A stretch of DNA of 64,000 bases, from positions 34,968,001-35,032,000 of the forward strand of contig NC_092351.1 of the NCBI RefSeq assembly GCF_963676685.1, read 5' to 3'. The DNA comes from Mytilus edulis (taxonomy: Eukaryota). This document shows, piece after piece, positions 33,524 through 63,066 of the stretch. Position 1 is the first letter of the stretch; each line of letters opens with the position of its first letter. Under the pieces are notes generated by a model. It did not search any database. It was not told where the DNA came from and worked only from the letters and a program-made list of their open reading frames with translations. Position numbers and translations under genes: made by a program.

Positions 33524-34344
33524 GGTTGACATTTCTGCTTATTAGAAAAGAATAAATTATACATTGATTATATTTTTGTTACTGAAACATAGTTGGTGGT
33601 TATGATTAGGCCAAACGTGTTGCAAGTTTAAGTGACGACGTCTGACAAAATACACTCAAAGTCACAGTGGATGACAAACAAAGAAAAATTCTAAACTGTG
33701 TATCAGATGAATACAAAATAAAATAAACAGTAAATTACATTTAATTGAATCGCCGCTGCTAAAACTAAAAAACGGGATCAAAATATAAATACAAAATTGA
33801 TATTCAAAGTTAAAAACAAATTAAAAAATAGATATGACAAAATAGCAAACTAGACTTTTTACCGTCTTTCAAGTAATAACCTTTATTTTGACCTAAAATG
33901 AAATCAGATCGGCGCAAATTTGACAACTCAATGATAAGCGTTAAATATTAAAAAAAAAACCAAGCTCATATGAATCGCTGAAATCTTGTTGTAGGAATAT
34001 AAAAAAACAATATCGATTATCTTCTGTAATCAATACGGAGTAAATTGTTTAAGTGTTATCTTTTCCACACTATGGCGAGTACTCTTTTTTGTACCTATGA
34101 GAATATTTTTTTGACAATATCTGAATATCTGAAACAGTAACAGATGTTTCACTAAAAACACAATGGGTAAATAAATGATATGATATGCTACATTTATCGG
34201 ACTAGTTGTATTGCAAGAATAAACAAAAGAAGTTAAGTTTAACACAACATGAAATGGCAAAATCAAAAGCTACTTAAAAAACTAACAACTAAAAGCAAAT
34301 TTAAAAAAAAAATTATATCCAAATCGAAGACTGCTAACAGCTGT

Positions 34345-37300
34345 CTAAAAGTAACATCCAAGACAAACAGTTTCCACATTTAAACATTTGCCGTAGAATC
34401 TCCATCCGGCTTCAGCACGGCTGGTAATCTACACACGCAGAACATTTGGTTCTGCAATGAAAACCGTGAGAGGATTTTCCGGTTGTGCTTGAGTGGAGTA
34501 ATTGTCACCGCTTCAAAAGGTATGTACATTTCTAAATCTCAGTTTTCTCATTCAACTGATCAAAATATTGAAAATCGGAGAATGCTATGCTGTGGTGAAT
34601 ACTTTAACGAAGAGATACATGTATCATTTACTGTTGTACGTAGAGTTGAACTCCTACAAAATCAGTTGTCCCACGAGATATTGCCTAAAAAAGTGACATT
34701 TCAATTTTGAAATGGTTCTATTTACAGACCTACAAGTTCAAATTTAGTTTTTTTTCGTGCAATGGGTATGAATGTTGTTTTTGGAGGCGTGTGCGCTGTC
34801 CTGTGTTGATAGACGTCTTAATAATTCCAAAAACTACATTTTTTCATGAAGTCATGTCACTTAATATGTGATAACTATGGTTAATAACATAATAAATCTA
34901 CAAACGCATGCCCACGTAATATTCAGAAAGTCTACATATGAATCCATATTTCATATGTGGACGTGGCGCGCGTCTGACGTATTAAAATTTTGAACCAGGT
35001 ACCTGTTGTTGGCTATTAATCATTTGTTTCTCTGTCCTATATTTTCTCCCATTTATTTGTATTGTAGTCCTCTCATGTAATATTTTCATTGTTATGTTAT
35101 AATTAACATTGCCTTTAAATTTGGAGGTTTGGCATGCAACAAAACCAGGTTCAACCCACCTTTGTTATCTTAAAATGCCATGTACCAAGTCAGGGAAATG
35201 ACCATTGTATATTATAGTTCGTTTCTGTGTGTGATACATTTTAATGTTGTATTTCTGTTGTGTCGTAGTTCTCTTATATTTGATGCGTTTCCTTCAGTTT
35301 TAGTTTGTAACTCGGATTTGTTTTTTCTCTATAGATTTATGAATTTCGAACAGTGGTATACTACTGTTGCCTTTATTCATACTTGGACAACAAATAATTA
35401 TGATGTGTACTGTTCCCTTTTAAAATTTTCGTTTTCAATTATGTAACAGAATTTACGTTTGGCATTTCGAACAGACCATGTTATTCAGCAATTATCATGA
35501 CATGCCCGTATATAATATGTAAATGAAGTTCGATTATTATATCAGCATATTTATTATTCGAGCCTTCAACTACTTATGGAAGTGTTGTTTTTTTTTTTTT
35601 TTTTTTTTTTTTTTATCTTTTATCTGTTACAGTATTGCAGTTATTGTATTGTCAGATTATTCTAATGCATTTCTTTTTATACACATGTAATTTCGAGTTC
35701 TGGAATCAAAAGTGTGTCTGATTACACTTTCGACTAGTTTTGACCCTTGGTAACAACATCTATTATAGTTTAAAATATACTTGCTTTCTCTAAATTATAC
35801 AACATGACTGGTTAAAATTCATTGGAATCCGTAAATCGTTTTTTTTTTTATTTATTGATTTCTGTCTCATTAAATGTGCTCCTAATTTTCTAAAGAGCGG
35901 TTTTCTAACTATTCAAATATCACAGTATCGTGTGTCAAGATATAAAAAAGAAAAGCAAATTCTAGATTCATGCACATGTGAAACCATACTTAACAATAAT
36001 GTTCAATCATCAATCAAAAAAATACTTACGAAACGAAAACTACATTTTATCGAGGACATGCCTTGTACCTTGTTTATTTTAGACTTTTAATAGTTTTGAT
36101 AAGTGTTTTACATTATTAATATTCAAATATGCGAATATTGAGTCTAATAGCTGAAAATGAGTTTGACAGCCAGTACCCCAGTTAAAAAAAATGTTTTTTT
36201 TTTTATACAAACCTAGTCATGGCACTGTTGAAATGAATACCCATGCAAGTCCTTGACATAACACAGCTTACAGCACACACTGATTTTGAACATTTAATTT
36301 CGTCGACTACAACCATATCAGACCTGGTATTATCCATAGTACAGCTGTCAAAATATCCGATAAAGTTGTCTGAAACTATTTTAAATGTGTTTAATATATT
36401 TATAAAAAAAAAGCTTTATTCAAACCACTATAGAATATGAAGAGGTTTAATTTTCGAAAGTGAATGAGGATTTACGATAAGGTTTTTTTTTGGCCTATCA
36501 AAATATATATGAAAAACAAAAGTGAAATGTAAAGTACGACATGTGAAGTTTCATTTGCGTGATAAAACTGTTCATGCTTTTGCATGCGCATAAAAAATAA
36601 CTGGTATATCTTTTCATAGTTCTAGTATTGCTATTTATTCAAACCAATTGTAACAGTCTACAATTGAGAATGGAAATGGGGAGTGTGGCAGTAGTTTTGA
36701 CACTAAAAAATGTAATGGTTGTTGTAAAAACACTGGATCAAATTATACAGGAGAGAAAAGAACATATGTTTTAGTTGAGTTTAGTATCTCATGCATGAGT
36801 TTTAATAATTAATTGTTTTTGGCTTTTAACTAGCTGTCAGTAATTGCGAGTACTCTCAAATCGTACTTTCTTGTTCATTTGACCTGTTGATACTATTTGT
36901 AATGCTTAAATCTGTACAGGGAAGTGTTATACAGCTCTAATTTTATAGTTTTATTGTTGATATTCACCTCATATGTATCTAGTGTTAAATTAGGTATTTA
37001 TATTACAGAACTGTCTTGGTATTTCTTATTCTTCTTCTTTTTCAGGAAGTCTACCCTATCTGCAGCGTCACCGCATTTAAAATATGTGTCTATTTTTAAA
37101 AATGCGTTATTAGAAATTTTATGTACTAGTTAAAATTTTAACAATAACAGTAACAGAATATTAAAAATTAGTTAAAAAACAGGTACTTGTATTTACACTA
37201 TACATTTTAAAATGGATAAAAATACTAACTTATCAGTTGTTTGTAAATTTCTCTTTGAAAAGAGAAAGTGATATGATTTACTATTCCGTATTAATAATGG

Positions 37301-40300
37301 GTAAATTTATGCACTTGTGTGGTTTCATATTTAGTTTACATTACTTTGTAGTAATTTAAATCTCAATGGTAAAAATAAAAATATAAATAAGAGAAAAAAC
37401 TCTATAAAGATTAGTAGAGGTCGTATTTGAGAAAATTTTATATACACAGAAGTAGTATACCTAAATCGACAAAGTTATATTTACCTGTATATATTATGTT
37501 TTTTATTCAAAAGTGAGTTGTTAAATATTTTGCGGTTTTTTGGTTTTTGGCCTTGAATGTCTGTCTCTAATATTTTATTAACCGTGTATTTGCACTCAGG
37601 TAGTGCAGTTCAAATTTATTCGTTCATAGTGTGTTTATTTGCCTTTTGTTTGATTAAGTTAAGCCTTCCCATTTATATTTTATCGTGTGTTTTTCTATGT
37701 TGTGATGTTATACTAAAAACGGAGCAGGTTTGGTACCATTAAAACGTTTAATCCCGCTGCAAATGTTTGCACTTGTCCTAAGTCAGGAATCTGATGTACA
37801 GTAGTTGTCGTTTGTTTATTTAATTTATACGTGTGTCTCGTTTCTCGTTTTTTATATAGATTAGACCGTTGGTTTTCCCGTTTGAATGGTTTTACACTAG
37901 TAGTTTTGGGGCCCTTTATAGTTTGTTGTTCGGTCTGAGCCAAGGCTCCGTGTGAAAGGCCGTACATTGACCTATAATGGTTTACTTTTATAGATTGTTA
38001 TTTGGATAAATAGTTGCATCGTTGGCACTCACACCACATCTTCCTTTATTTATGTTAAAGTACTGCACCGACTCCAGAAAATGTATGGACTTATTATATT
38101 ATATCTTTTATTCTGATTAAACAATATATGCTCATCGTATATTTCTTTTTTATTTTAAGATCACAATTGAAATTTTTATCCACCAAGAGTGTACACGATT
38201 TGTTTTTTTCCTACCGGAAGTTAAACCCCTGCCAAAGCGGACCGTCTATTAAGCTGTGTGAAATATACAAATAAGGAGCAATGTACTGTAAGAATTTGGA
38301 CAATAGAGTCAATGCCTCAAAATTACCTTCAAATTGTATTCTCCAACTTCCTAACATACCATAGGTTGTTAATACTCCAATAGCTTTCACTTCAAACTGA
38401 GGTGCATTTGTCAAATATCCCAATACGTTTTCATCAACGACAATCCCAGTTCCTAATTTAATGTCTCCATCTGCCCAACTAATCCAGAATGGTAGATACA
38501 CAGTGCAGTTAAATATATTCGGTGTAAGAAATTTAGAAAAAATCCTGCTTCCAGAATCTAACGAATCGTCAGCGCGATAGATAATGTAGGTTTCATAAGT
38601 ATCAAATCCAATATCAATCTCATACATTGGTTCTGACGAGATTCTGAAATCAGAACTTGACAGAAGGACATGTGCTCGACCACATCTCTTTAATTCAAAT
38701 ACTAACGACGTTATTCCACTAAGGTCCAGTTTATACCTATTTACGTCAATAGTGAAATCCATGACATCAGGTGTAAACCATGAACCTACTTTACCGTTGA
38801 CCTGGGTTGATACAGTGGTTGTTATATGTACACCTTAAAAAAAACCGTATATCATAAAACATATATCGCAAATACATCGTATATATCTATGTGAAGCCAA
38901 GGTGATCGAGTGGTCTAGCGTGTCTAGTGCAGTCGATTTGTTGTCACGATATCTCAGTTGCATCTCTTTCGATCCCGGCGAAGGGGGATCAAAACAATTG
39001 CGAAAGCAAATTTACAGTAACATTGTTGGGCTGATGTTAAGACGAATTCTATATATATATATATATGTTATATATATATATTTTTTTCTTACTCCTATAT
39101 ATTTATAAAGATATGATTGATTAATTTAAAAGGACTAAATGTCGTGACTACGTCTATTTTGTATAGGGTGCCCTAAAAATACATGGCTAGTTACCATATA
39201 GGGTTAGCCACCATATGGACCTATAAAGGAATTACTTCCCTTTCAAAACAATAAAGATGCCACAATCCTTTATTACATAAAAATAACACGGTGTTGAGGA
39301 CAAATCTAATTCAACAGACGAAGAAATTGATGATGAAAGGTTGAATAAGTTCATAAAACATAATTAAAGCCAACAAGTTATTATTGTTGGCATATGGGAG
39401 TAACTTCCCTTTAAAAAAAAAAGAAAAAAGAAATTTGAAAGAATTTAACCAACGAAGAAATTGATACATATAATAAACGATTGAAATAAATTCATAAAAC
39501 GAATATGAAGCTAAAAAGTTGTTTGCATTTGTTTTCTGTATAGACAAATGGAAGTAGAATTTACTAAGTAATGAACACTTGATCACTATGAGATGTCGCT
39601 AGTCCAAATACCACATGTGAAGATAGTCGGTAAGATAAATTCTGTATACGGTGTGCTAGTGACCATCCCATATGGAATTTACTGACCCCATATATATCAT
39701 ATTAGGTCACTAAAAGAGGGACGAAAGATACCAAAGGGACAGTCAAACTCATGAATCTAACACAAACTGACAACGTCATGGCTAAAAATGAAAAAGACAA
39801 ACAGAAAAACAATAATACATGACACAACATAGAAAACTAAAGAATAAACAACACGAACCCCACCAAAAACTAGGGGTGATCTCAGGTGCTCCGGAAGGGT
39901 AAGCAGATCCTGCTCCACATGTGGCACCCGTCGTGTTGCTTATGTGATTACAAATCCGGTAAATAGTCTAATTCGGTAGGTCACATTCATGAAAGGGAAG
40001 GGGATTGTAGTTACGACGCAAGGAACATATCCGATATCATTTGTGAAACGGTTATTCCATAACGGTCAACCAACTCGTGATGGCGTCCGTAAAATTTACG
40101 AAGGGATGATTTCAACTTCACCATTTGGAACTCTTGGTTTAATAGCTTCCTTGTGAGCAGTAACCCTCTATCAAGAAAATCATGATAGGAAATGCAAGCA
40201 CGGGAATATCGTATCAATTGGGAGATATATACCCCGTATCCAGGTGCTGCTGGAATGTTGCTACTTAGAAATAGAAAGTTCACAATTGGAAAGCTGAAAT

Positions 40301-42613
40301 CATCTCTTTTGTCGTAAAGTTTTGTTTTCAACCGACCCTCATTGTCAATTTCTAGATGTAAGTCAATATATAAAGCCGACTTAACTGTATCTGTAGTATC
40401 CTTTATCCCCAATTCGATGGGATAAATGCGTTCCACATAGTCACCAAATTTTGAATTGTTTAGTGAAAGAACGTCATCTATATAGCGGAATGTAGAGTTA
40501 AAGGATATTGCTAACTTCTTATCTTTCTTCCTAAGAAGTTCCTGCATGAAGTCAGCCTCATAATAATAAAGAAACAAGTCGGCAAGTAGAGGGGCACAGT
40601 TTGTTCCCATTGGGATGCCAACAGTCTGTTGAAAAACACGTTCACCGAACGTTACAAATATGTTGTCAATCAAGAAATCAAGCATCTTGATAATATCGGT
40701 TTCAGAGATTTTTTTGTTTGAATCAGAGTGATTCTTTACAAAGTATGATTTATCCCTCCCTAAGACAAGATACTTGTATCTACGTCACTTGGCCATTCTT
40801 TTTTATGAAGCAAAGTAATACCAACTCTTTCAGTTTGTCTTTTAGTTTGGAATGTGGAATACTTGTGTAAAGAGTAGAAAAGTCAAATGTTTTAATACTG
40901 TTACAAGATGAAAGAGAGTTAGATTGTATGTACTCTAAAAGATCTTTAGAATTTTTAAGTATCCACATCTGATTCACGCCACCTCTAGAATAGGCAGTTT
41001 CACAATAACTTTGAAGCCCGTCTTGGGTTGCTGATAAAATAGATGTTAATAATTTAGAAAGAGGTTTCGTGGAGCACTTGGAATACCCAGCAATATACCG
41101 TTGTTTGTAAGGACACTTATGTAGTTTAGGTATCCAATACAGTGATGGAAGATCCAGTTCTTCATCTTTGGTTGAAATACCAAAAGAACAAAGAACAGAC
41201 CTATGAATATCCAGGATTTCCTCTTTGGTAAGTGTCGTGAGGGTATATGTTGAGTTTCCAAGTGAATTTTCTATACCTTATTCGTTTATCAAGCAATTAA
41301 TGTAGTGACTTTTACAGACAAAAACGATGTTATTTGGGGCTTTGTCACTAACACTCTATGTAACTAATAATATATATTTTGGAATATGTTGTTTGTGCTG
41401 TATTTAGGCCCTTCTACAACGAAATTTGTTTTGCATGCACACGTATAAAATTGCGGTTTTTATCCAACGCAATCATAGGTTTGAACGTAGTTTTCAATTT
41501 AGACTTGTATATATATCAGACGTACTTATAAATATAATTATTTTCTGTGACTGTATCTTGCATTAATTTGTAGGATCCTTTACTATCGATAATTGAGCTG
41601 ATCTGTAACAATAACATCTCCATGCCTTATATATCATGTGCTGTATTACGACGCTAGATTAAAACTGACGAGGAAAGGTAACACACGGCCACCGAAAGCT
41701 TTAGTTTTGTGAAGCCCAGGTGGTCATGTGGTCTAGTGCACCGGATACAGTGCAGGCGATTTGGTGTCACGATATCTCAGTAGCATGGGTTCGAATCCCG
41801 GCGAAGGAAATACAAAAAATTTGCGAAAGCAAATTTACAGATGTAACATTGTTGGGTTGTTGTCAGAACAAAACGAAGGTCAAGAGAAAATTAACAATAG
41901 GACAGACAAAATACCGATATTAGGGTATCCGCTGTTACTGTAAGCTAGAAAAAGCTAATAAAACAATTAAATAAATCATTTGTACAATATCAAAAGTTAT
42001 CTATACATTTCATAATGATTGTTACAGTAATTTCTTTTGTTGAACTGTTAAACCAACGTTCACACACATTTAATACTGCCGTATTGATTATTTTAAAGAT
42101 TCTTTTATAACGTGCTAAACAATTTGTAATTTGGTTTTTGATAAATTTCTACTTTCATTGACATGTAGGTTTTTTCAAGTTATAAAGTGATGGGTAGTTT
42201 CTTATTAAAGTAAACAAACCATATCCTAACTAAGTATTGCTTAGATGGATACATTAAGAAACTTAAAATTTACGAAAAAAAGAAGACAAAAAATATTCAA
42301 CTTAAGCTACACCATGTACAACCCCAGTCGCGAAAAAAAACACAACAAAAATATAAATGTATATAACATTTAATTTATGACTATTCCTTGAATATAAGCT
42401 AGTGCTCACTAGCTTCAAACATTTTCAGACTATTAGTAGTTATTGTGTTAGAAATATAATTTTTGAAATAATTGCTTCGGTTATAAAATTAATTTGTGAA
42501 CTGGCACTTAAACATGTTAAATGAAACTTGAGGAGTGAAATAAATATTTACAGAAAAATCAACTTACCACCAGCGTTAGGAGCCAATAAACAGAAAAGTA
42601 GTATTCTACACAT
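34345..42613 (-). CDS. Left copy of secreted FAMeT-like (Methyltransf_FA) + PAN-domain gene; exons 42613-42568, 38833-38327, 36375-36213 intact; exon 4 survives only as 34415-34345
   Basis: MCRILLFCLLAPNAG signal exon; FELKRC..AHVLLS...YEIDIG...PFWISW.DG.IKLG.G...GSWRI domain; CAVSC..SRTCMGIHFN PAN motif; GT-AG phases 1/1/2 are consistent. Confidence 0.7.
38896..39081 (+). mobile_element. tRNA-derived SINE with (TA)n tail
   Basis: Homologous to 15361-15533. Confidence 0.75.
39714..41343 (-). mobile_element. 5'-truncated Penelope-like retroelement (RT), disrupted; flanked by gtcactaa duplication
   Basis: LYWIPKLHK, FDFSTLYTSIPH, GIPMGTNCAPLLADL, FRYIDDV, YISQLIRYSRAC; frameshift near 40785. 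Confidence 0.9.
41714..41858 (+). mobile_element. tRNA-derived SINE, 3'-truncated
   Basis: A-box TGGTCATGTGG, perfect B-box GGTTCGAATCC. Confidence 0.8.
41864..42030 (+). repeat. ~165-bp direct repeat, partner at 44110-44275 (mirrored at 51595-51760 / 53845-54012)
   Basis: cagaacaaaacgaag...aaaataccgat.ttagggtatccgctgt.actgtaagctagaaaaagct. Confidence 0.85.
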
Positions 42614-44275: not shown

Positions 44276-44276
44276 G

Positions 44277-44309
<33 letters not shown>

Positions 44310-50800: not shown

Positions 50801-51589
50801 ATAATTAACATAAATAAAATTAGAAGAAAAAAAACAATAAGAGAATCATACTTAAAACATTTGAATATTTCGAATTTCTATAATTGTGAAGCATGTTCAA
50901 GCTGGGACCTCGTTAATTCATGACTGCACATGTGTCCGGTGAGGTGATATGCATCACATGAAATTCGCTATTTTACTCTTTTGTCATGTTTATATATAAT
51001 TTATCATATATAATATAGCTACACTGAATTAGTATTGTTACTAGTTTACACAATACAATGCTTGGATACTTCATTCATGTATCGTTAATTAGACCACGTG
51101 TATTTTCGATCATTTTTTTTATCTTCGGTTTGATCGCAAAAAAATACCATTTGCTTAAAAAAAAATTATGTTGTTCATATAATGTGTGACAAAAACAACT
51201 GTCTTACCTATTCATTTAAGACTCCTTTTCACAATTCAACGGAGTAAACTAACATAAAATTTCGAAATTCTACTGTCGCCTGAAAAGTCATGCTATCAGT
51301 ATCAAAGATCATCATCAATTGCACGGTTTAGTGAAGCTTTAATAAATAAATCAAATACAGTTTAGGTTAAGAAACGTACCGTATTCCGGTATGCAATTGT
51401 ACTCTGTAGAACTGCTCTAATATATGTAATAAATATAACTAACTTTATAGATATACTTATTGAATACTTTTCCCTAAATATTCAAAAACTTATTTAAGGG
51501 ATACTAAATTGAAGCTGTAGATTGAGTAAATTGTTAACAGCAAAAGTGCAATAAAACTTTGAATAATTTAAAAAAAAAAAAAAAAAAAA
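47825..51589 (+). mobile_element. Decayed L1/Tx1-clade LINE (APE + RT remnants) with AATAAA and poly(A) tail
   Basis: QETH, NLYAPNN, TDHYAV, GRGYWKL, NYRPITLLNYD, DFTKAFDSLEW, QLADDT, LKLNRNKT, LGIYFG; many stops/frameshifts; A-run 51570-51589. Confidence 0.9.
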
Positions 51590-54016
51590 GAAACAACTAT
51601 AATAATCTTATGAAATGTCACGATACATTTTGATATTGTACAAATGATTTATTTAATTGGTTTATCAGCTTTTTCTAGCTTACAGTGACATTGGATACCC
51701 TAAGATCGGTATTTTGTTTGTCCTTTGGTTAATTTTTTCTTCAGCTTCGTTTTGTTCTGATAAGTAAAAATCATTCCAACTGAGTTTGAAAGTTTGTTCA
51801 AATACTGTTTTGTATAATATTAATAGTTACATGGTGTGTTAGTGACCTGATACGATATAAATGGGGTCCATTAATTCCATATGGGGTGAGTGAGATGGAT
51901 AACGCATGAATTGGATATAAAATTATTTAAAGGTAAGGAATGTCAACATTGAAAGTAAAACAAAGGTAAATCATTTAATTGACTGATTCGATCCACAAAA
52001 AAATCGTTCTTATAAGGTAAAAACGATGATAAACATTTATTTTTCATTTATAATATGAAATTAAAAAGACCTAGAATAATCTAACCGCACGAGTTTTCTT
52101 AATCTATGCATATCTATATTAATGTTTACATCACTTATATGGTCATCGGATGGTCATCGGATGACTTTAAAGGTCAACTCGATGATTAATAAGTTGGCGT
52201 CTAGACTAAAATACACACGAAACGAAGCTACGTATATTTATGCCCGTGCCCGGTTAATTGTTTATTTTAGACTTTTAAGATTTTGGATATGTGTTTTACA
52301 TTGTTATAAATCAAACATAAGAATTTGATTAAAATCGGTGATCATAAATTTGACAGCTAAACAAAATGTATTGGCCCTTTTAAAAAAATAATATTTGTAA
52401 TTACAACTCATTTTATTTCACAGTCCGGCTTTTTAAATCAAATATTATTTCATAAAGTGAGGGAAATGTTCTAATAAAATGCGTTTAAAAAATTTGAATA
52501 ACTATTTACAATTCCTGTTGCTTTTATTTTATCGAAATATTGGTAATCAGAGTTTTGGAAAGCTAAAGATTATTTTGATTTTCATTTTAAAACTTTTTTG
52601 TTGTTATTTTTTTAATTTTGCATTGCTTTGATGTTTATAGTTTTATTAATTCGAAGTTATTCATATTTACACTCGAGGTGAACATTTTACTGCACCAGTA
52701 CACTTAAACTTATTACTTTAGATTTCTTTGTTTCTTTCTCAATACTGCTTTTAGTCAGGTTCAATAACTGTGATAAATCCTTTCAATCTGATTTATGTGA
52801 TGCAGTGCAGTTGCAACTCAATTATAGAAACTCTTTGTTTTGAACTGTAAATAGATCAAAATATTAGGATTATCTCTAACTAAGAAATAACAATGATTTA
52901 CCTTCATTCTTCACAATTAAGAGCCATTAAATTCTACAATTTAATTGGACAAGAGTATTTTGCTATATTCTAAATATTTATGATCGAGGGTCATAAAGGG
53001 TATATATTATATAGTAATATATAAAGTATATCATAATAGTTGTGTGACGTTCTAAACTAGATTTTATTAATTGTAAATGGATTTTTGTCTTATCTAAAAC
53101 ATCTGGGATGTAAAATAGTTATTACATTCGGACTTGGTGTGTCAATGTAAGATCACCCTCTAGCCTATAAACATGTTAAAAATCAAATATTGTTAATAAA
53201 TAATCAATGATAGATAATTTTACTGGGACTTATGAATACGGTGAAAATGATTTTCACAGATCAGATGTGTAGAATACTACTTTTCTGTTTATTGGCTCTA
53301 AACGCTGGTGGTAAGTTGATTTTTCTGTAAATATTTATTTCACTCCTCAAGTTTCATTTAACATGTTTAAGTGCCAGTTCACAAATTAATTTTATAACCG
53401 AAGCAATTATTTCAAAAATTATATCTCTAACACAATAACTACTAATAGTCTGAAAATGTTTGAAGCTAGTGAGCACTAGCTTATATTCAAGGAATAGTCA
53501 TAAATTAAATGTTATTTACATTTATATTTTTGTTGTGTTTTTTTCGCGACTGAAGGTGTACATGGTGTAGCTTAAGTTGAATATTTTTGGTCTTCTTTTT
53601 TTCGTAAATTTTAAGTTTCTTAATGTATCCATCTAAGCAATACTTAGTTAGGATATGGTTTGTTTACTTTAATAAGAAACTACCCATCAGTTTATAATTT
53701 GAAAAAAACCTACATGTCAAAGTAGAAATTTATCAAAAACCAAATTACAAATTGTTTAGCACGTTATAAAAGAATCTTTAAAATAATCAATACGGCAGGA
53801 TTAAATATGTGTGAGCGTTGGTTTAACAGTTCAACAAAAGAAATTACTGTAACAATCCTTATGAAATGTATAGATAACTTTTGATATTGTACAAATGATT
53901 TATTTAATTGTTTTATTAGCTTTTTCTAGTTTACAGTAACAGCGGATACCCTAATATCGGTATTTTGTCTGTCCTATTGTTAATTTTCTCTTGACCTTCG
54001 TTTTGTTCTGACAACA

Positions 54017-54160
54017 ACCCAACAATGTTAGATCTGTAAATTTGCTTTCGCAAATTTTTTGTATTTCCTTCGCCGGGATTCGAACCCATGCTACTGAGAT
54101 ATCGTGACACCAAATCGCCTGCACTGTATCCGGTGCGCTAGACCACACGACCACCTGGGC
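54017..54160 (-). mobile_element. tRNA-derived SINE (mirror of 41714-41858)
   Basis: A- and B-box on the minus strand. Confidence 0.8.
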
Positions 54161-54530
54161 TTCACAAAACTAAAGCTTTCGGTGGCCGTGTGTTACCTTT
54201 CCTCTTCAGTTTTAATCTAGCGTCGTAATACAGCACATGATATATAAGGCATGGAGATGTTATTGTTACAGATCAGCTCAATTATCTATAGTAAAGGATC
54301 CTACAAATTAATGCAAGATACAGTCACAGAAAATAATTATATTTATAAGTACGTCTGATATATACACAAGTCTAAATTGAAAACTACGTTCAAACCTATG
54401 ATTGCGTTGGATAAAAACCGCAATTTTATACGTGTGCATGTAAAACAAATTTCGTTGTAGAAGGGCCTAAATACAGCTCAAACAACATATTTCAAAATAT
54501 ATATTATTAATTACATAGAGTGTTAGTGAC

Positions 54531-56154
54531 AAAGCCCCAAACAACATCGTTTTTGTCTGTAAAAGTCACTACATTAATTGCTTGATAAACGAATTAGGTA
54601 TAGACAATTCACTTGGAAACTCAACATATACCCTTACGACACTTACCAAAGAGGAAATCCTGGATAATCATAGGTCTGTTCTTTGTTCTTTTGGTATTTC
54701 AACCAAAGATGAAGAACTGGATCTTCCATCACTGTATTGGATACCTAAACTACATAAGTGTCCTTACAAACAACGGTATATTGCTGGGTCTTCCCAGTGC
54801 TCCACGAAACCTCTTTCTAAATTATTAACATCTATTCTATCAGCAACTCAAGACGGGCTTCAAAGTTATTGTGAAACTGCCTATTCTAGAGGTGGCGTGA
54901 ATCAGATGTGGATACTTAAACATTCCAAAGATCTTTTAGAGTACATACAATCTAACTCTCTGTCATCTTGTAACAGTATTAAAACATTTGACTTTTCTAC
55001 TCTTTACACAAGTATTCCACATTCCAAACTAAAAGACAAACGGAAAGAGTTGGTATTACTTTGCTTCATAAAAAGAATGGCCAACGTAGATACAAGTATC
55101 TTGTCTTAGGGAGGGATAAATCATACTTTGTAAAGAATCACTCTGATTCAAACAAAAAATTCTCTGAAACCGATATTATTAAGATGCTTGATTTCTTGAT
55201 TGACAACATATTTGTAACGTTCGGTGGGCGTGTTTTTCAACAGACTGTCGGCATCCCAATGGGAACAAACTGTGCCCCTCTACTTGCCGACTTGTTTCTT
55301 TATTATTATGAGGCTGACTTCATGCAGGAACTTCTTAGGAAGAAAGATAAGAAGTTAGCAATATCCTTTAACTCTACTTTCCGCTATATAGATGACGTTC
55401 TTTCACTAAACAAATCAAAATTTGGTGACTATGTGGAACGCATCTATTCCATCGAATTGGTGATAAAGGATACTACAGATACAGTTAAGTCGGCTTCATA
55501 TCTTGACTTACATCTAGAAATTGACAATGAGGGTCGGTTGAAAACAAAACTTTACGACAAAAGAGATGATTTCAGCTTTCCAATTGTGAACTTTCCATTT
55601 CTAAGTAGCAACATTCCAGCAGCACCTGGATACGGGGTATATGTCTTCAATTGATACGATATTCCCGTGCTTGCATTGTCTATCATGATTTTCTTGATAG
55701 AGGGTTACTGCTCACAAGGAAGCTATTAAACCAAGAGTTTCAAATGGTGAAGTTGAAATCATCCCTTCGTAAATTTTACGGACGCCATCACGAGTTGGTT
55801 GATCGTTATGGAATAACCGTTTCACAAATGATATCGGATATGTTCCGTACGTCGTAACTACAATCCTCTTCCCTTTCATGAATGTGACCTACCGAATTAG
55901 ACTATTTACCGGATTTGTAATCACATAAGCAACACGACGGGTGCCACATGTGGAGCAGGATCTGCTTACCCTTCCGGAGCACCTGAGATCAACCCTAGTT
56001 TTTGGTGGAGTTCGTGTTGTTTATTCTTTCGTTTTCTATGTTGTGTCATGTATTATTGTTTTTCTGTTTGTCTTTTTCATTTTTAGCCATGGCGTTGTCA
56101 GTTTGTTTTAGATTTATGAGTTTGACTGTCCCTTTGGTATCTTTCGTCCCTCTT
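54531..56154 (+). mobile_element. 5'-truncated Penelope-like retroelement (RT), two frameshifts; TTAGTGAC duplication
   Basis: ORFs 54582-55109, 55061-55654, 55651-55857 carry consecutive PLE RT/thumb motifs; ttagtgac at 54523-54530 and 56155-56162. Confidence 0.9.
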
Positions 56155-56790
56155 TTAGTGACCTAATACGATATATATGGGGTCAGTAAATTCCATAAGG
56201 AATGGTCACTAGCACACCGTATACAGAATTTATCTTACCGACTATCTTCACATGTGGTATTTGGACTAGCGACCTCTCATAGTGATCAAGCCTTCATTAC
56301 TTAGTAAATCCTACTTCCATTTGTCTATACAGAAAACAAATGCAAACAACTTTTTAGCTTCATATTCGTTTTATGAATTTATTTCAATCGTTTATTATAT
56401 GTATCAATTTCTTCGTTTGTTAAATCCTTTCAAATTTCTTTTTTCTTTTTTTTTTAAAGGGAAGTTACTCCCATATGCCAACAATAATAACTTGTTGGCT
56501 TTAATTATGTTTTATGAACTTATTCAACCTTTCATCATCAATTTCTTCGTCTGTTGAATCAGATTTGTCCTCAACACCGTGTTATTTTTATGTAATAAAG
56601 GGTTGTGGCATCTTTATTGTTTTGAAAGGGAAGTAATTCCTTCATAGGTCCATATGGTGGCTAACCCTATATGGTAACTAGCCATGTATTTTTAGGGCAC
56701 CCTATACAAAATAGACGTAGTCACGACATTTAGTCCTTTAATCAATCATATCTTTATAAATATATAGGAGTAAGAAAAAAAATATATATA

Positions 56791-58093
56791 CAGTCCGCCA
56801 AAAGTTAAGCACCACCTACTTTTATTGCATCGATTTTTTTTCAAATTTAAAAAATCAATTGTTCCTCGAAAAATAGAAAACAATCATATAGCAATTTTGC
56901 TAATGTATACCATAAACAAACCACAAATATAATTTTGGTCACTTATGAAGGTTCTATGCATATAGGTTTTTCGTTCATAGAAAAAGTGTAAATTACACAA
57001 TTAAGAAATGGAATTTAAGTTTCACTGTGATTTTATTTTTTTACAACAATTAATCACCCAATACCATTAAAATTTTCTACACATAATCTTTGGTATGTTT
57101 GGCAAATTTAATGTCAATATTTGAGTCAATAGCATGTGTAACAACCTCATTTCCGGTACAGTTTCATAACACGACCTATCTTTCTCGGTACAAGCCTTCA
57201 AAACTTTAGTTGAGGAAATCTGTTGCATTAAACAACAAATGCCACTTTTAAATCGACAAACTTTTGTAAAGGTGAATCTCTGCGATTGAGATTTTCGACA
57301 ATGGCATCTCAGACATGTTTGATAGGGTTCATGCATGGAGTCAAGGAAGGCCAAAAATTAGTGTAAATGGCTGGTTGGTCTTTGGACTCGGTTAAAATTC
57401 TTGCCCTGCGTGGTATAGCGTTGTCATTCAGGTACAAGTGTCTTGACAATGTTGACGCAAGTGGGGGATTACTAAAATGACGGACTACAATATGTTAAGG
57501 CACCAAATCTCTGTATGTCTGTCCGTTTATGTTACCCTGCAGAATATGCATACCCAGCTTATAACGGTATAAGAAGCAACCCCGTACTGGAACACAACCA
57601 GCAATGCATGCAGTCCTTGTGCAAATATTGTTTTTGGTCATAGGCCGTTTTTTACCCCTGCGAAATTCGTATTATGGCGTCTTCTGGCAGTAAAGGAAAC
57701 TGACTCCCATCTGACCAATGAGTGTTTTGTCAGGTTCTTATGTTCAAGCATAGATTTTTATTATCCCATTTAAACCTGACGGTAGAGTGCCTGCTTGAAG
57801 GTACAGGTCTCTATACACCATGACGTGCTCTTCGTTTGCCTCTTTAAAGTCGACGGACCAATGTACGAACACTTACACGACCACCTGGAGAAACAGTGTA
57901 TTTATAAACGCACATATGACCTTTGATAAAAGGTTGGTTGACTGCTTTATCGGAGTGCAATCTTTTTGGTCGTAATGAATTTTTTTAATGTATGTTAAAG
58001 GTAATTCATAACACCAAACATTAATAGTTTTTTTGCAATAGTTAAAAAAATATTGCCAGTTATATTTCGGTGGTGCTTAACTTTGGCGGACTG
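56791..58093 (-). mobile_element. Tc1-family DNA transposon with decayed transposase, right arm only
   Basis: TIRs CAGTCCGCCAAAAGTTAAGCACCACC / GGTGGTGCTTAACCTTTGGCGGACTG, TA duplication; minus-strand SVRTLVRRL*RGKRRAR..RP.......RFKW resembles a Tc1 HTH region. Confidence 0.85.
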
Positions 58094-58268
58094 TATATAT
58101 ATATAGAGAGAGAGAATTCGTCTTAACATCAGCCCAACAATGTTACTGTAAATTTGCTTTCGCAATTGTTTTGATCCCCCTTCGCCGGGATCGAAAGAGA
58201 TGCAACTGAGACAGCGTGACAACAAATCGACTTCACTAGACACGCTAGACCACTTGATCACCTTGACT
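58094..58268 (-). mobile_element. tRNA-derived SINE (mirror of 38896-39081), tail split by the Tc1 element
   Basis: Reverse complement match. Confidence 0.75.
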
Positions 58269-59288
58269 TCACATAGATATATACGATGTATTTGCGATAT
58301 ATGTTTTATGATATACGTTTTTTGTTGAAGGTGTACATATAACAACAACTGTATCAACCCAGGTCAACGGTAAAGTAGGTTCATGGTTTACACCTGATGT
58401 CATGGATTTCACTATAGACGTAAATAAGTATAAACTGGACCTTAGTGGAATAACGTCGTTAGTATTTGAATTAAAGAGATGTGGTCGAGCACATGTCCTT
58501 CTGTCAAGTTCTGATGTCAGAATCTCGTCAGAACCAATGTTTGAGATTGATATTGGATTTGATACTTATGAAACCTACATTATCTATCGCGCTGACGATT
58601 CATTAGATTCTGGAAGCAGGATTTTTTCTAAATTTCTTACACCGAATATATTTAACTGCACTGTGTATCTACCATTCTGGATTAGTTGGGCAGATGGAGA
58701 AATTAAATTAGGAACTGGGATTGTTGTTGATGAAAACGTATTGGGATATTTGACAAATGCACCTCAGTTTGAAGTGAAAGCTATTGGAGTATTAACAACC
58801 TATGGTATGTTAGGAAGTTGGAGAATACAATTTGAAGGTAATTTTGAGGCATTGACTCTATTGTCCAAATTCTTACAGTACATTGCTTCTTACTTGTATA
58901 TTTCACACAGCTTAATTGACGGTCCGCTTTGGCAGGGGTTTAACTTCCAGTACGAAGAAAACAAATAGTGTACACTCTTGGTGGATAAAAATTTCAATTG
59001 TGATCTTAAAATAAAAAAAGAAATATACGATGAGCATATATTGTTTAATCCGAATAAAAGATATAATATAATTAGTCCATACATTTTCTGGAGTCGGTGC
59101 AGTACTTTAACATAAATAAAGGAAGATGTGGTGTGAGTGCCAACGATGCAACTATTCATCCAAATAACAATCTATAAAAGTAAACCATTATAGGTCAATG
59201 TACGGCCTTTCACACGGAGCCTTGGCTCAGACCGAACAGCAAACTATAAAGGGCCCCAAAACTACTAATGTAAAACCATTCAAACGGT

Positions 59289-60231
59289 GATAAAGAAAAG
59301 TAGACTGTACCCTGATAAATTTATTGCGAAATTGAAAGGGACTGGGGACATTATAAAATAAGATCGAGGATCTGATGAAGTAGAACAAGTGAATCCAAAT
59401 GATGTTGATTATCAAATATATAAGAAAAACGTAGAACATGACTTTGTAGATGTAAGAACTTATGGATTTCGTCCGAATGATACTAACGATAAACTTTTGT
59501 TGATTGCTAAATTTGCCTTTGACAAAGATCTTTTCGTTTGTAAGAAATGATTGATGTTTATTTTAGATGAATTTTAAATTTTGAATATTCCATGATTTTG
59601 AAAACTTTTTTTCTGCTATATTTCAACTAACAAGTCTTTTGAGTAAACAACTAACAATGGCTAAAATGTCAAAATAAAGTTGATTGTATGACAGAATTGG
59701 AAAACCATCTGCATACATTCAATATTTGTTTTCATGCTATGATACTTGTTGTGACTGAGAGAAATGTTGTGAAATATAAATATGAGTGATTGTTTTTTTT
59801 TTTGTTTTTTTTTTTATATATATTTTTTTTTTTTTAAATTTAAAGATTAGAAAATAATTTAAAAAAAGAAACTAAGTGATAATGATGTAATGTGTAAGAG
59901 TATGCATGTGTGAAGTGTTGCATGGACTTTCTACAAAATATTATATAGATGATATGTATAACGATTGTATAGTATGCATAGATATGTAGTATGAATAACA
60001 ATTAGAAAAAATCTATGTCAAAAAAAAAAAGAAAAAAAAGATTCACTTAACTTTTGAAAACGTTTGCTTTTCTCTTTAAAACACATGCATTGAGACGAAA
60101 ACAATCAATGCAGGAAGTTTAATGTAATGATATTTGCAAAGTGTTGTTACTTTAAGTCTAATATGGCTTCTAAAGATTAAACATGTTGAAGAGAGAACCA
60201 GTTGAAAAAAAAAAAAAAAAAAAAAAAAAAA
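59289..60231 (+). mobile_element. Right-arm-specific insertion, probably a 5'-truncated LINE 3' end with poly(A)
   Basis: Absent from the left arm; ENVEH..V.C and LLLIAKF resemble L1/Tx1 ORF2 C-terminus; ends in a ~27-nt A-run. Confidence 0.6.
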
Positions 60232-62998
60232 GAAAGTTCTGTAATATAGATACCTTATTTAACACAAGATACATATGAGGTGAATATCAACAATAAAACT
60301 ATAAAATAAGAGCTGTATAAAACTTCCCTGTACAGATTTAAGCATTACAAATAGTATCAACAGGTCAAATGAACAAGAAAGTACGATTTGAGAGTACTCG
60401 CAATTACGGACATCTAGTTAAAAGCCAAAAACAATTAATAATTAAAACTCATGCATCAATTACTAAACTCAACTAAAACATATGTTCTTTTCTCTCCTGC
60501 ATAATTTGATCCAGTTTTTTACTATAACCATTACATTTTTTAGTGTCAAAACTACTGCCACACTCCCCATTTCCATTCTCAATTTTAGACTGTTACAATT
60601 GGTTTGAATACGTAGCAATACTAGAACTTAGAAAAGACTTACCAGTTATTTTTTATGCACTTTCGCTTCATCGCATGCAAAAACATGAACAGTTTTATCA
60701 CGCAAATGAAACTTCACATGTCGTACATTACATTTCAATTTGTTTTTCGTATAATTTTTTGATAGGCCCAAAACACTCTTATCGTAAATCCTCATTTACT
60801 TTCGAAAATAAAATCTCTTCATATTCTAAAGTGTTTTGAATAAAGCTTTTGTATTTATATATTAAACACGTTTAAAATAGTTTCAGACAACTTTGCTTGA
60901 TATTTTGACAGCTGTAGTATGGATAATACCAAGTCTGATATTGTTGTAGTCAACGACATTAAATGTTCAAAATCAGTGTGTGCTGTAAGCTGTGTTATGT
61001 CAAGGACTTGCATGGGTATTAATTTCAACAGTGCCATGACTAGGTTTGTATATAAAAAAAAAAACATTTTCTTTTTAACTGGGGTACTGGCTGTCAAACT
61101 CAATATTCTCATATTTGAATATTAATAATGTAAAACACTTATTAAAACTATTAAACGTCTAAAATAAACAAGGAACAAGGCATGTGCTCGATAAAATGTA
61201 GTTTTCGTTTCGTAAGTATTTTATGATTGATGATTGAACATTATTGTTAAGTATGGTTTCACATGTGCATGAATCTAGAATTTGCTTTTCTTTTTTATAT
61301 CTTGACGCACGATACTGTGATATTTGAATAGTTAGAAAACCGCTCTTTAGAAAATTAGGAGCACATTTAATGAGACAGAAATCAATAAATAAAACAAAAA
61401 CGATTTACGGATTCCAATGAATTTTAACCAGTCATGTTGTATAATTTAGAGAAAGCAAGTATATTTTAAACTATAATAGATGTTGTTACCAAGGGTCAAA
61501 ACTAGTCGAAAGTGTAATCAGACACACTTTTGATTCCAGAACTCGAAATTACATGTGCATAAAAAGAAATGCATTAGAATAATCTGACAATACAATAACT
61601 GCAATACTGTAACAGATAAAAAGATAAAAAAAAAAATTAAAAAAAAACAACATAACCATAAGTAGTTGAAATAATAAATATGCTGATATAATAATCGAAC
61701 TTCATTTACATATTACATACGGGCATGTCATGATAATTGCTGAATAACATGGTCTGTTCGAAATGCCAAACGTAAATTCTGTTACATAATTGAAAACGAA
61801 AATTTTAAAAGGGAACAGTACACATCATAATTATTTGTTGTCCAAGTATGAATAAAGGCAACAGTAGTATACCACTGTTCGAAATTCATAAATCTATAGA
61901 GAAAAAACAAATCCGAGTTACAAACTAAAACTGAAGGAAACGCATCAAATATAAGAGAACTACGACACAACAGAAATACAACATTAAAATGTATCACACA
62001 CAGAAACGAACTATAATATACAATGGTCATTTCCCTGACTTGGTACATGGCATTTTAAGATAACAAAGGTGGGTTGAACCTGGTTTTGTTGCATGCCAAA
62101 CCTCCAAATTTAAAGGCAATGTTAATTATAACATAACAATGAAAATATTACATGAGAGGACTACAATACAAATAAATGGGAGAAAATATAGGACAGAGAA
62201 ACAAATGATTAATAGCCAACAACAGGTACCTGGTTCAAAATTTTAATACGTCAGACGCGCGCCACGTCCACATATGAAATATGGATTCATATGTAGACTT
62301 TCTGAATATTACGTGGGCATGCGTTTGTAGATTTATTATGTTAATACCATAGTTATCACATATTAAGTTAATTAAATATACATAAACATATTTTTGTTAA
62401 AGCGCCAGCAAAAGCAATTTTTCTCTGGGTGCGGGATTTTCTCGCTGTATTAACGACCTATTGGTGGCATTCTGCCAATTTTTAATCTGGTTACTGTCTC
62501 TTTGGCACATTCCTCATTTCAATTTTCAAGTTTATAATGCTTCGTCATTGTTGTCAGTATAGTAAAAATCAATGTGACAATCATATACATGAGAACTGTA
62601 GCTAGATTTATAACCCAGCTGCATCTACCATTATCTATGTATCGCGCGTTCGTGTGTGAATTCAGTAATATAACAGTGTTTTCCATTTGTTTCGGGTTGG
62701 CATTTTTTGTTATAACGAACCTTCCGTTTTAAATTGTCCAAGGACTTCGTTTTATGTTATTATACTTTTCACAAACAACAAACTATACGTGTATTAATTT
62801 AAACAGTAGTCATTTATACATTTTAGATGTGAGCTTCTCTCGTTTGGACCAGATGTTGTGACAGACATACAACTTCACACTGAAGCCGGATGGAGATTCT
62901 ACGGCAAATGTTTAAATGTGGAAACTGTTTGTCTTGGATGTTACTTTTAGACAGCTGTTAGCAGTCTTCGATTTGGATATAATTTTAAAAAAAAATTA

Positions 62999-63066
62999 GC
63001 TTTTAGTTGTTTGTTTTTTAAGTACAGATATTGCTTTTAGTTGTTTGTTTTTTAAGTACAGATATT
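62999..63066 (+). repeat. Exact 34-bp tandem duplication at the outer end of the right arm
   Basis: gcttttagttgtttgttttttaagtacagatatt x2. Confidence 0.9.

What the first reader, a model, noticed from the sequence alone, without database searches (positions are those of the whole stretch)
34271..63024. ~29-kb imperfect palindrome with a 350-bp spacer
Seen: 34858-47474 is the reverse complement of 47825-62368, with a further matched block 34271-34415 / 62880-63024. The arms differ by scattered substitutions and by several arm-specific insertions and deletions, so this is not a fold-back read artefact. Established: inverted duplications with a short unique spacer are the signature of fold-back repair or replication template switching, and are usually unstable. 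Inference: an old, stably inherited gene-duplicating palindrome. The main alternative is two divergent haplotypes mis-joined head-to-head by the assembler.
Basis: partly seen in the sequence, partly recalled or inferred. Interest (0 to 1): 0.8.

Follow-up and report, generated by a model that had tools for sequence, protein, structure and literature searches.

The report
Mussel gene palindrome, probably genuine
A 29-kb stretch of a blue-mussel chromosome holds two mirror-image copies of one secreted-protein gene on either side of a broken jumping element; it looks like a genuine but fairly ordinary inverted duplication, although the public reads could not rule out an assembly error.

Summary
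Window 34271-47474 is the reverse complement of 47825-63024, with a 350-bp spacer. Outside two replaced blocks the arms differ by 299 substitutions in 11,860 aligned pairs (2.52%) and 37 indels.

The window is chromosome-scale piece C8 of a 1.37-Gb Mytilus assembly. Its scaffold count and N50 match M. edulis xbMytEdul2.2.

- **Arm content:** each arm holds a decayed LINE whose 5' end faces the centre, and one complete four-exon gene: signal peptide, FAMeT domain, Cys-rich tail.
- **Which arm is the parent:** the spacer is LINE sequence continuous with the right arm. The right arm plus its flank is colinear with paralogues across the outer boundary. So the right arm is parental and the left arm is the copy.
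- **New junctions:** 47474|47475 and 34270|34271, both blunt.
- **Later changes:** transposon insertions and deletions have hit each arm, and each gene copy carries a different disabling lesion.
- **Second case:** an older palindrome of the same gene family lies 400 kb away.
- **Untested:** no listed public contig crosses 47474|47475, and arm divergence is close to mussel heterozygosity. A head-to-head haplotype mis-join is unlikely (no gap, two exact junctions needed) but not excluded.

Verdict: probably real, and a new member of a known kind.

The parts
34271..47474 (-). Left arm (13,204 bp). Inferred to be the derived, inverted copy.
   Evidence: Its outer end meets unrelated sequence: no similarity between 31500-34270 and the right flank or the paralogues' downstream regions.
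47475..47824 (+). 350-bp spacer. It is LINE sequence continuous with the right arm, not a foreign insert.
   Evidence: Other genomic copies of the LINE align without a break from window 47476 into the right arm at 79-90%.
47825..63024 (+). Right arm (15,200 bp). Inferred to be the parental copy.
   Evidence: Alignment to the paralogue 29 kb downstream runs across the outer boundary (62534-63507 with +90429-91372, 67.6% over 1019 columns). The same holds for the older palindrome's left gene (62649-62960 and 63238-63430).
47475..51589 (+). Decayed LINE remnant of the right arm, spacer included (family has APE endonuclease, RT and zf-RVT). Poly(A) at 51570-51589. It lacks the family's first ~135 bp and an internal ~1.19 kb.
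   Evidence: The internal deletion is shared by both arms, so it predates the duplication.
44277..47474 (-). Mirror LINE remnant of the left arm. It starts 350 bp further into the element and lacks a further 556 bp (breakpoint 44333|44334).
   Evidence: The 556 bp kept in the right arm (50983-51538) is the LINE's own 3' part, because it lies in the same place in other copies.
53232..53312 (+). Probable exon 1 (signal peptide) of the right gene copy. Mirror in the left arm: 42646-42566.
   Evidence: Weak tblastn to N-termini of Mytilus family proteins (E about 0.01-0.03). Position and strand fit.
58327..58836 (+). Exon 2 of the right copy: FAMeT domain (PF12248). Mirror in the left arm: about 38836-38328, inside ORF 38211-38762.
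   Evidence: Pfam E 1e-11 to 9e-13. 95% identical to M. edulis protein P0002. The two copies differ by 3 synonymous and 4 non-synonymous changes in 145 codons.
60880..61044 (+). Exon 3 of the right copy (start of the Cys-rich, PAN-like tail). It has an in-frame TGA at about 60898-60900, made by four adjacent substitutions. The left copy (36376-36212) is open.
   Evidence: PAN_1 is only sub-threshold (19 bits against a cutoff of 21.4).
62825..62950 (+). Exon 4 of the right copy, intact, with stop codon TAG at 62948-62950. The left arm keeps only the last 22 codons (34413-34345).
34416..34856 (.). Young 441-bp repeat present only in the left arm. It stands where the right arm has 511 bp (62369-62879) that include the 5' half of exon 4.
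   Evidence: All 39 other listed hits covering this part are 97-99% identical. The right-arm block is shared with paralogues.
56793..58094 (.). 1302-bp element with terminal inverted repeats, flanked by TA, in the right arm only. The empty site is in the left arm at 39068|39069.
   Evidence: ends and empty site; 39 other copies listed, 28 of them at 97-99%.
59279..60043 (.). Repeat nested in intron 2 of the right arm. It replaces the inner part of an older repeat that the left arm keeps (37045-37877).
   Evidence: Protein P0002 from another M. edulis assembly reads into this same repeat (59329-59547, 92%).
54528..56155 (+). Decayed reverse-transcriptase element in intron 1, present in both arms (left: 39713-41346).
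   Evidence: Sub-threshold RVT_1 hits. A 92.7% copy lies in L021. Mapping between arms.

Best explanation
This is a genuine inverted segmental duplication in a Mytilus (most likely M. edulis) chromosome.

**What was copied.** A block of about 15 kb was copied in reverse and placed directly upstream of itself. The block holds a decayed LINE, about 1.6 kb of upstream DNA and one whole four-exon gene for a secreted FAMeT-domain protein with a Cys-rich tail. The parental copy is the spacer plus the right arm.

**The two new joints.** One lies at the 5' edge of the LINE remnant (47474|47475), where the copy starts 350 bp further in. The other lies 74 bp past the gene's stop codon (34270|34271). Whatever lay left of the LINE edge, including the LINE's first ~135 bp and its upstream target-site duplication, was lost.

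**Likely mechanism (inferred, not shown).** A break at or in the LINE was followed by copying of the broken end's own sequence in reverse, by fold-back or by template switch onto the opposite strand. About 13 kb was copied before joining to the other side by end joining, because both joints are blunt.

**Since then.**
- The arms drifted to 2.5% divergence.
- Each arm took its own transposon insertions and deletions.
- Each gene copy acquired a different disabling lesion.
- The innermost 1 kb stayed, or was made, nearly identical, probably by arm-to-arm gene conversion.
For: - **Layout:**
- **Copy number:** the non-repeat parts of the arms occur only twice in the 1.37-Gb assembly, as the two arms. 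each gave 2 full-length places among the 40 scored, so this is not a mobile element.
- **Spacer:** it is continuous LINE sequence with the right arm.
- **LINE family:** in all 5 comparisons of L001 with L002-L006, the copies share at least 117 bp upstream of the point matching 47475.
- **Parental arm:** right arm plus right flank is colinear with the paralogue across the boundary and with the second palindrome's gene.
- **Left-arm edge:** the left flank has no similarity to anything downstream of the gene.
- **Gaps:** there is no N anywhere in the window. Assembly gaps between copies are a listed hallmark of false duplications (PMC9516828, passages seen).
- **Order of events:** the LINE's 1.19-kb internal deletion is shared by both arms. 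The one-arm insertions belong to families whose listed copies are mostly 97-99% alike.
- **Central similarity:** 6 mismatches in the central 968 bp against 24.4 expected (Poisson P about 1e-5), and the inner 304 bp are identical.
- **Precedent nearby:** a second head-to-head pair of the same family lies at C8:35,410,140-35,457,072 with arms 69-94% identical, too diverged to be alleles. In a tree, each palindrome's arms are sisters: L1+R1 at 100/100, P2L+P2R at 89/91.
Against: - Of 276 pieces, 32 were listed, and none of those crosses 47474|47475. Contigs do cross 47824|47825, but that is ordinary LINE continuity. Depth cannot be used, as the tool itself says.
- **Divergence fits alleles:** the arm divergence of 2.5%, with transposon-sized indels, is what two mussel haplotypes would show (3.27% heterozygosity in the sister species).
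- **No alternate contig:** no second-haplotype contig for this region exists in the assembly for comparison.
- **No microhomology:** the fold-back model predicts 2-8 bp of inverted microhomology at the spacer joint in most human cases (13 of 21, PMC3907307, passages seen). Here there is none, though the ancestral sequence left of 47475 is only inferred from ~90% identical LINE copies.
- **No smooth gradient:** similarity does not fall steadily away from the centre (Spearman rho 0.30, p 0.15 over 24 windows).
- **Platform is recall:** that the assembly is HiFi-based is my recollection of Darwin Tree of Life practice, not a call result.
Confidence: 0.72

Rival explanations
1. Heterotype false duplication. 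The two arms are the two haplotypes of one single-copy locus that the assembler joined head to head, so the palindrome does not exist in any mussel.
For: - Arm divergence of 2.52% plus transposon presence/absence differences is in the range of Mytilus allelic divergence (3.27% heterozygosity in M. galloprovincialis).
- No third copy or alternate contig exists in the assembly.
- No listed public contig crosses 47474|47475.
Against: - There is no N in the 64-kb window, whereas false duplications are typically separated by gaps (PMC9516828).
- It needs two exact false joins, 47474|47475 and 34270|34271, inside one contig.
- A haplotig would run on into the mirror image of the right flank, but similarity stops dead 74 bp past the stop codon.
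- The 350-bp offset at the centre is unlike missed-adapter or duplex fold-back reads, which have no spacer (my knowledge, not a call).
- The same gene family has an undoubted older palindrome 400 kb away.
Confidence: 0.15
2. An ancient palindrome that only looks young. The head-to-head gene pair is as old as the one 400 kb away, or shares its origin, and arm-to-arm gene conversion has kept these arms at 97.5%.
For: - A second palindrome of the same family shows the arrangement is old in this cluster.
- Each palindrome's arms are sisters in the tree, as concerted evolution would give.
- Similarity is patchy: the central 968 bp are at 0.6%, and a 627-bp tract is identical at 34885-35512.
Against: - The left arm stops 74 bp past the stop codon, whereas the older palindrome's arms run at least 4 kb further out on both sides. 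The two layouts therefore differ.
- Every shared transposon, including the LINE with its private 1.19-kb deletion, sits at the same place in both arms. One recent copying event explains this more simply.
- I found no similarity between the two palindromes' central regions: a LINE search of the older centre gave none.
Confidence: 0.1
3. A giant foldback-type transposon, or cargo carried between inverted transposon ends.
For: Another note of this scan reports an 18.5-kb foldback element in this genome (s1-841858, not checked by me).
Against: - The non-repeat parts of the arms occur only twice in the genome, as these two arms.
- There is no target-site duplication at the outer ends.
- The outer ends are not equivalent: the right end continues into homologous flank.
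Confidence: 0.02

Closest known systems
Large gene-bearing palindromes / inverted segmental duplications of animal genomes (for example the sex-chromosome ampliconic palindromes; recalled, no paper read here)
   Same: - Two arms of more than 10 kb in inverted orientation
- High arm identity and a short unique spacer
- A whole gene in each arm, head to head
- Patches of near-identity that suggest arm-to-arm gene conversion
   Different: - Arm identity is 97.5%, far below the more than 99.9% I recall for the Y-chromosome palindromes.
- It lies in a bivalve, on a chromosome whose autosomal or sex-linked status I did not determine.
- Both gene copies carry lesions, so there is no sign of selection keeping them.
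Fold-back inverted duplications of human chromosomes (Hermetz et al. 2014, PMC3907307; abstract and passages seen)
   Same: [quoted passage not shown]
- One side of the break is lost.
- Repeats (LINE, Alu) lie at some junctions.
   Different: - The human cases are megabase duplications next to terminal deletions, translocations or rings; this one is 13 kb and interstitial.
- The spacer is 350 bp, against 766-70,466 bp.
- Microhomology is 0 bp, where 13 of 21 human junctions have 2-8 bp.
Heterotype false duplications in assemblies (Ko et al. 2022, PMC9516828; abstract and passages seen)
   Same: Two adjacent near-identical copies whose divergence matches heterozygosity.
   Different: - There is no gap between the copies.
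- The orientation is inverted, with an exact 350-bp offset.
- The copy has a sharp outer end.
- Read depth and k-mer copy number could not be tested.

Membership tests
Large palindrome (inverted segmental duplication with short spacer) | Two arms over 8-10 kb, inverted, over 90% identical | tested here: met
   Arms of 13.2 and 15.2 kb. 97.5% identity over 11,860 aligned pairs outside two replaced blocks.
Large palindrome (inverted segmental duplication with short spacer) | Short unique spacer between the arms | tested here: met
   350 bp at 47475-47824.
Large palindrome (inverted segmental duplication with short spacer) | Both arms lie on one DNA molecule in the organism | tested here: inconclusive
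   One gap-free contig (0 N). None of the 32 listed pieces (of 276) from four public runs crosses 47474|47475.
Large palindrome (inverted segmental duplication with short spacer) | Arm-to-arm gene conversion | tested here: inconclusive
   Central 968 bp have 6 mismatches against 24.4 expected, and there is a 627-bp identical tract. There is no overall gradient, and alleles could show the same patchiness.
Fold-back inverted duplication | Single-copy spacer continuous with the non-inverted copy | tested here: met
   Spacer plus right arm is one continuous LINE sequence.
Fold-back inverted duplication | Inverted microhomology (2 bp or more) at the spacer/inverted-copy joint | tested here: not met
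   0 bp on reading 47460-47490 and 47810-47840 against LINE copies. The ancestral sequence is only inferred.
Fold-back inverted duplication | Loss of sequence on the far side of the break | tested here: inconclusive
   The LINE's first ~135 bp and its upstream target-site copy are absent from the window. The LINE may instead have been truncated at insertion, as L007 and L008 are.
Heterotype false duplication | Assembly gap between the copies | tested here: not met
   No N in the window.
Heterotype false duplication | Half read depth and single-copy k-mers on each copy | not testable with these tools
   Only Logan contigs were served. The tool states that depth cannot be used.
Heterotype false duplication | Divergence between copies equal to heterozygosity | tested here: met
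   2.52% against 3.27% in M. galloprovincialis. This is compatible with alleles but not specific to them.
Foldback transposon | Several copies in the genome, with target-site duplications | tested here: not met
   Only the two arms match full length. The sequences flanking the two outer ends show no shared repeat.

The most novel reading that the evidence does not exclude
This FAMeT-gene cluster on mussel chromosome piece C8 makes head-to-head palindromes repeatedly: two independent ones lie 400 kb apart. The younger was seeded by a LINE. Its centre lies at a LINE 5' edge, in the same 80-bp zone where 2 of 10 sampled copies are naturally truncated, and the LINE's upstream target-site copy is missing. 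That would fit an unfinished LINE integration whose free DNA end folded back and was copied. The two arms now carry complementary lesions (exon 3 dead on the right, exon 4 dead on the left), so arm-to-arm conversion could still rebuild one intact gene.
Probability: 0.12. Interest if true: 0.55.

Novelty: new member of a known kind. Interest (0 to 1): 0.3.

Why it matters
If real, this is a dated, base-resolved natural example of an interstitial inverted duplication in a bivalve. Both joints are readable, the parental arm is identified, and an older sister case lies in the same gene cluster. That is useful for studying how structural variation and gene presence/absence arise in mussels, and whether palindromes shelter or erode gene copies. 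It matters little for function, because both copies of the gene look damaged. It also flags a locus worth checking in the assembly. If it is a haplotype mis-join, gene counts for this family are inflated by one.

Tried and rejected
1. **Reads.** The look-up of sequencing runs listed 24 runs, none holding half or more of the sampled words. The one read-laying run (X17, X19, X18, X20 on 44650-50649) gave only short contigs.
   - Contigs cross 47824|47825: X17 record 5 has 0 differences, while X19 record 21 and X20 record 28 reach only 11 nt into the arm.
   - None of the listed pieces crosses 47474|47475.
   - I considered using contig depths (about 4 for spacer and arm-specific contigs, 6.75 for an arm-shared contig in X17). 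I rejected this: the values are noisy and the tool warns against it.
   - A contig running through the arm tip without a fork is uninformative, because X17 has no contig over 47475-47753 at all.
2. **Metagenome scan.** An exact 30-nt string across 47474|47475 found 0 hits in metagenome contigs.
The contigs behind P0001, P0002 and P0021 (other Mytilus assemblies) could therefore not be fetched. This was the best route to an independent assembly.
4. **Missing LINE parts.** I looked for the LINE's missing 5' part at the left flank and found none. I looked for its upstream target-site copy and found only the two arm copies at 0 mismatches among 4 matches.
5. **Similarity gradient from the centre.** Not significant.
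6. **Second palindrome's centre.** I first thought it also had a ~380-bp spacer. I rejected this: the inner inverted pair is a 740-bp MITE with at least 39 other copies at 95-97%. The unmatched centre there is about 5.3 kb.
8. **Foldback transposon.** Rejected on copy number.
9. **Not consulted or not found.** Supplementary files of the papers were not consulted. No genome note for xbMytEdul2 was found (0 papers).

Full report
**Observation.**
- The repeat finder on 30000-64000 returned 28 inverted pairs (25 shown). They line up as one series from 46100-47474/47825-49199 (1375 nt, 99%, 350 nt apart) to 34271-34415/62880-63024.
- Minus-strand blastn gave five colinear matches at 94.0-97.3% identity and one small off-diagonal repeat.
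- A global alignment has 12,968 aligned pairs and 78 indels.
- Outside two blocks that do not align, there are 299 substitutions in 11,860 pairs (2.52%), split 132 transitions to 167 transversions. There are 37 indel events: 17 of one base, and the two largest of 556 and 1302 bp.
- The window has no N.

**Where it is.**
- The window is G000:C8:34,968,001-35,032,000, in an assembly of 1,368,414,245 bases in 2368 pieces.
- Table 1 of PMC11304980 (passages seen) lists M. edulis xbMytEdul2.2 (Darwin Tree of Life) with 2,368 scaffolds, 3,557 contigs, N50 93.4 Mb and 30x coverage. Piece C7 here is 93,447,462 bases. I take the genome to be that assembly. This is an inference from matching numbers.
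- The best protein matches are also M. edulis.
- That the assembly rests on HiFi reads is my recollection of that project's practice, not a call result.

**What the arms contain.** Reading outward from the centre, each arm holds four things.
1. *A decayed LINE with its 5' end toward the centre.*
   - The family has an APE endonuclease, RT and zf-RVT.
   - It ends in poly(A) and makes 11-15-bp target-site duplications in young copies.
   - The copy here is about 90% identical to the four long copies fetched.
   - It carries a private 1.19-kb internal deletion that both arms share.
2. *About 1.6 kb of upstream DNA.*
3. *A four-exon gene.* Family proteins from M. edulis, M. galloprovincialis, M. 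trossulus and M. coruscus define the exons.

| Exon | Right arm | Left arm | Evidence |
|---|---|---|---|
| 1, probable signal peptide | 53232-53312 | 42646-42566 | tblastn E about 0.01-0.03 |
| 2, FAMeT domain (PF12248) | 58327-58836 | about 38836-38328 | Pfam E down to 9e-13 |
| 3, start of Cys-rich tail | 60880-61044 | 36376-36212 | PAN_1 only sub-threshold |
| 4, ends at stop codon | 62825-62950 | last 22 codons only, 34413-34345 | |

4. *Only 74 bp beyond the stop codon*, after which the arm ends.

So one whole gene was duplicated, head to head, with about 10.6 kb between the two start codons.

**Which arm is the original.**
- *The spacer belongs to the right arm.* Other genomic copies of the LINE align without interruption from window 47476 through the spacer into the right arm. 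In one search, six of the ten fetched loci (L001-L006) start at 47476 and L009 at 47475. L007 and L008 are naturally shorter, starting at 47506 and 47552. L010 gave no hit in that script.
- *The right arm's outer boundary is not a rearrangement point.* The alignment to the tandem paralogue 29 kb downstream runs straight across it (62534-63507, 67.6% over 1019 columns). The match to the left gene of the second palindrome does the same.
- *The left arm ends abruptly.* Sensitive blastn of 31500-34270 found nothing in the right flank or in the paralogues' downstream regions, apart from one 64-bp hit about 5 kb beyond the stop codon of the older palindrome's left gene, which I take to be a short repeat.

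Hence the spacer plus right arm is parental, the left arm is the copy, and the two new joints are 47474|47475 and 34270|34271.

**The joints.**
- The LINE family continues upstream of the point that matches 47475. All five comparisons of L001 with L002-L006 extend at least 117 bp further. In long copies the element begins about 135 bp upstream of it.
- Neither that missing piece nor an upstream copy of the LINE's target-site duplication is anywhere else in the window. So sequence was lost at the break, or the LINE was already truncated there.
- Reading the bases directly, I see no microhomology at either joint. The inner joint has at most one ambiguous T.
- A 34-bp tandem duplication sits on the parental outer boundary (62999-63066), so that end point could be read 34 bp further out.

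**What happened after the duplication.**
- *Right arm only:* a 1302-bp element with terminal inverted repeats, flanked by TA, with the empty site preserved in the left arm. Of its 39 other listed copies, 28 are 97-99% identical.
- *Left arm only:* a 556-bp deletion inside the LINE's 3' part.
- *Left arm only:* a young 441-bp repeat (39 listed copies at 97-99%) stands where the right arm has 511 bp. Those 511 bp include the acceptor and first half of exon 4.
- *Right arm only:* another repeat (59279-60043) replaces the inner part of an older repeat that the left arm retains.
- *Gene lesions:*
  - The right copy has a TGA in exon 3, created by four adjacent substitutions.
  - The left copy has lost half of exon 4.
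  - Exon 2 stays open in both copies, with 3 synonymous and 4 non-synonymous differences.
  - At all four amino-acid differences, P0001, P0002 and P0021 agree with the left copy (my reading).

**Pattern of similarity.**
- Divergence is roughly flat at about 2-3%.
- The central 968 bp are the main low exception, with 6 mismatches against 24.4 expected. The inner 304 bp are identical.
- A 627-bp identical tract lies at 34885-35512.
- A more diverged stretch (6-7%) lies beside the repeat-rich intron 2.
- There is no significant gradient (rho 0.30, p 0.15 over 24 windows).
- Arm-to-arm gene conversion would explain the patchiness, but so would uneven coalescence between alleles.

**A second palindrome.**
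- The exon-2 search showed another oppositely oriented pair 400 kb downstream.
- Fetching C8:35,408,001-35,458,000 revealed inverted matches from 2140-3861/49072-47389 (85%) inward to 21003-21102/26478-26379 (84%), at 69-94% identity. The genes are again head to head.
- Its apparent short central repeat is only a MITE.
- In a maximum-likelihood tree of exon 2 with flanks (9 sequences, none dropped), L1 and R1 are sisters (100/100) and P2L and P2R are sisters (89/91).
- Arms that diverged cannot be alleles, so inverted duplication is a real habit of this cluster. Because the older arms extend at least 4 kb past the stop codon on both sides, the two palindromes do not share one layout.

**Real or artefact.**
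- *Against a haplotype mis-join:*
  - The window has no gap. Gaps are a listed hallmark of false duplications (PMC9516828).
  - Two exact false joins would be needed inside one contig.
  - The left-arm end is sharp.
  - The centre has a 350-bp offset.
  - An older palindrome of the same family lies nearby.
- *For a haplotype mis-join:*
  - The divergence sits inside mussel heterozygosity (3.27% in M. galloprovincialis, PMC11183127).
  - Independent molecules across 47474|47475 could not be shown.
- I put a real palindrome at roughly 0.8 and the mis-join at about 0.15.

**Mechanism.**
- The layout is what a break followed by reverse copying of the broken end gives: a parental block, a single-copy spacer continuous with it, an inverted copy starting 350 bp in, and loss of the far side. 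This matches fold-back as in PMC3907307, or a template switch to the opposite strand during replication.
- Differences from the human cases are the small size, the interstitial position, a spacer below their 766-bp minimum, and 0 bp of microhomology. For that reason I favour end joining at both joints. All of this is inference.
- The coincidence of the centre with a LINE 5' edge is noted under the novel reading, at low probability.

**Comparison and novelty.** This is a new member of a known kind: a gene-bearing palindrome, or inverted segmental duplication. I searched the held library for a genome note (0 papers) and for Mytilus assemblies. I did not search specifically for reports of mussel palindromes, so I make no claim that none is in print.

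**Verdict.** Interest is modest.

Noticed in passing
G000:C8:35,410,140-35,457,072 (L021-L025): A second, older palindrome of the same FAMeT gene family. The genes are head to head, the arms are about 19-23 kb at 69-94% identity, and the unmatched centre is about 5.3 kb and holds a 740-bp MITE.
   Followed up: partly
29 kb right of the right-arm gene (window-relative 87,333-94,438; L012, L015): A tandem paralogue of the arm gene on the + strand. Exon 2 is 85.6% identical, and the paralogue is colinear with the right arm and its flank.
   Followed up: partly
window 60895-60900 vs 36356-36361: The stop codon in the right copy's exon 3 comes from four adjacent substitutions (ATCG to GCTT). This is a clustered multi-base change rather than independent hits.
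   Followed up: no
window 62999-63066: A 34-bp unit is repeated twice in tandem exactly at the parental outer boundary of the duplicated block.
   Followed up: no
L017, L019, L020 (C4:82.08 Mb, C8:45.72 Mb, C7:11.84 Mb): LINE copies that are 99.1-99.6% identical to each other, with poly(A) tails. Two of them (L017, L020) show 11-15-bp target-site duplications, so the family has been active recently. In L020 the coding region is in two open frames of 589 and 656 codons.
   Followed up: partly
window 34416-34856 and one search hits: Elsewhere, the 441-bp young repeat often occurs as inverted pairs about 1.2 kb apart (for example C5:55,645,709 / 55,646,939). It may be the long terminal repeat of a ~1.7-kb element, with a solo copy here.
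   Followed up: no
window 12312-12737 (+): A 141-codon ORF matches the C-terminal domain of histidine N-acetyltransferase (PF24066, E 9e-21). It lies outside the palindrome.
   Followed up: no
window 49203-50151: Contigs of three runs (X17, X19, X20) join 49203 to 50151, skipping 947 bp of the right-arm LINE, with only 21 nt on the shorter side. This is probably another LINE copy with a deletion rather than a variant of this locus.
   Followed up: no
P0021 (M. galloprovincialis VDH96184.1): An annotated 367-residue protein fuses two FAMeT exons in the same orientation. The first resembles protein P0004, a more distant M. edulis family member. The second resembles the arm gene and is closer to the left copy. 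This hints that the orthologous region in that species has a different neighbour arrangement.
   Followed up: no
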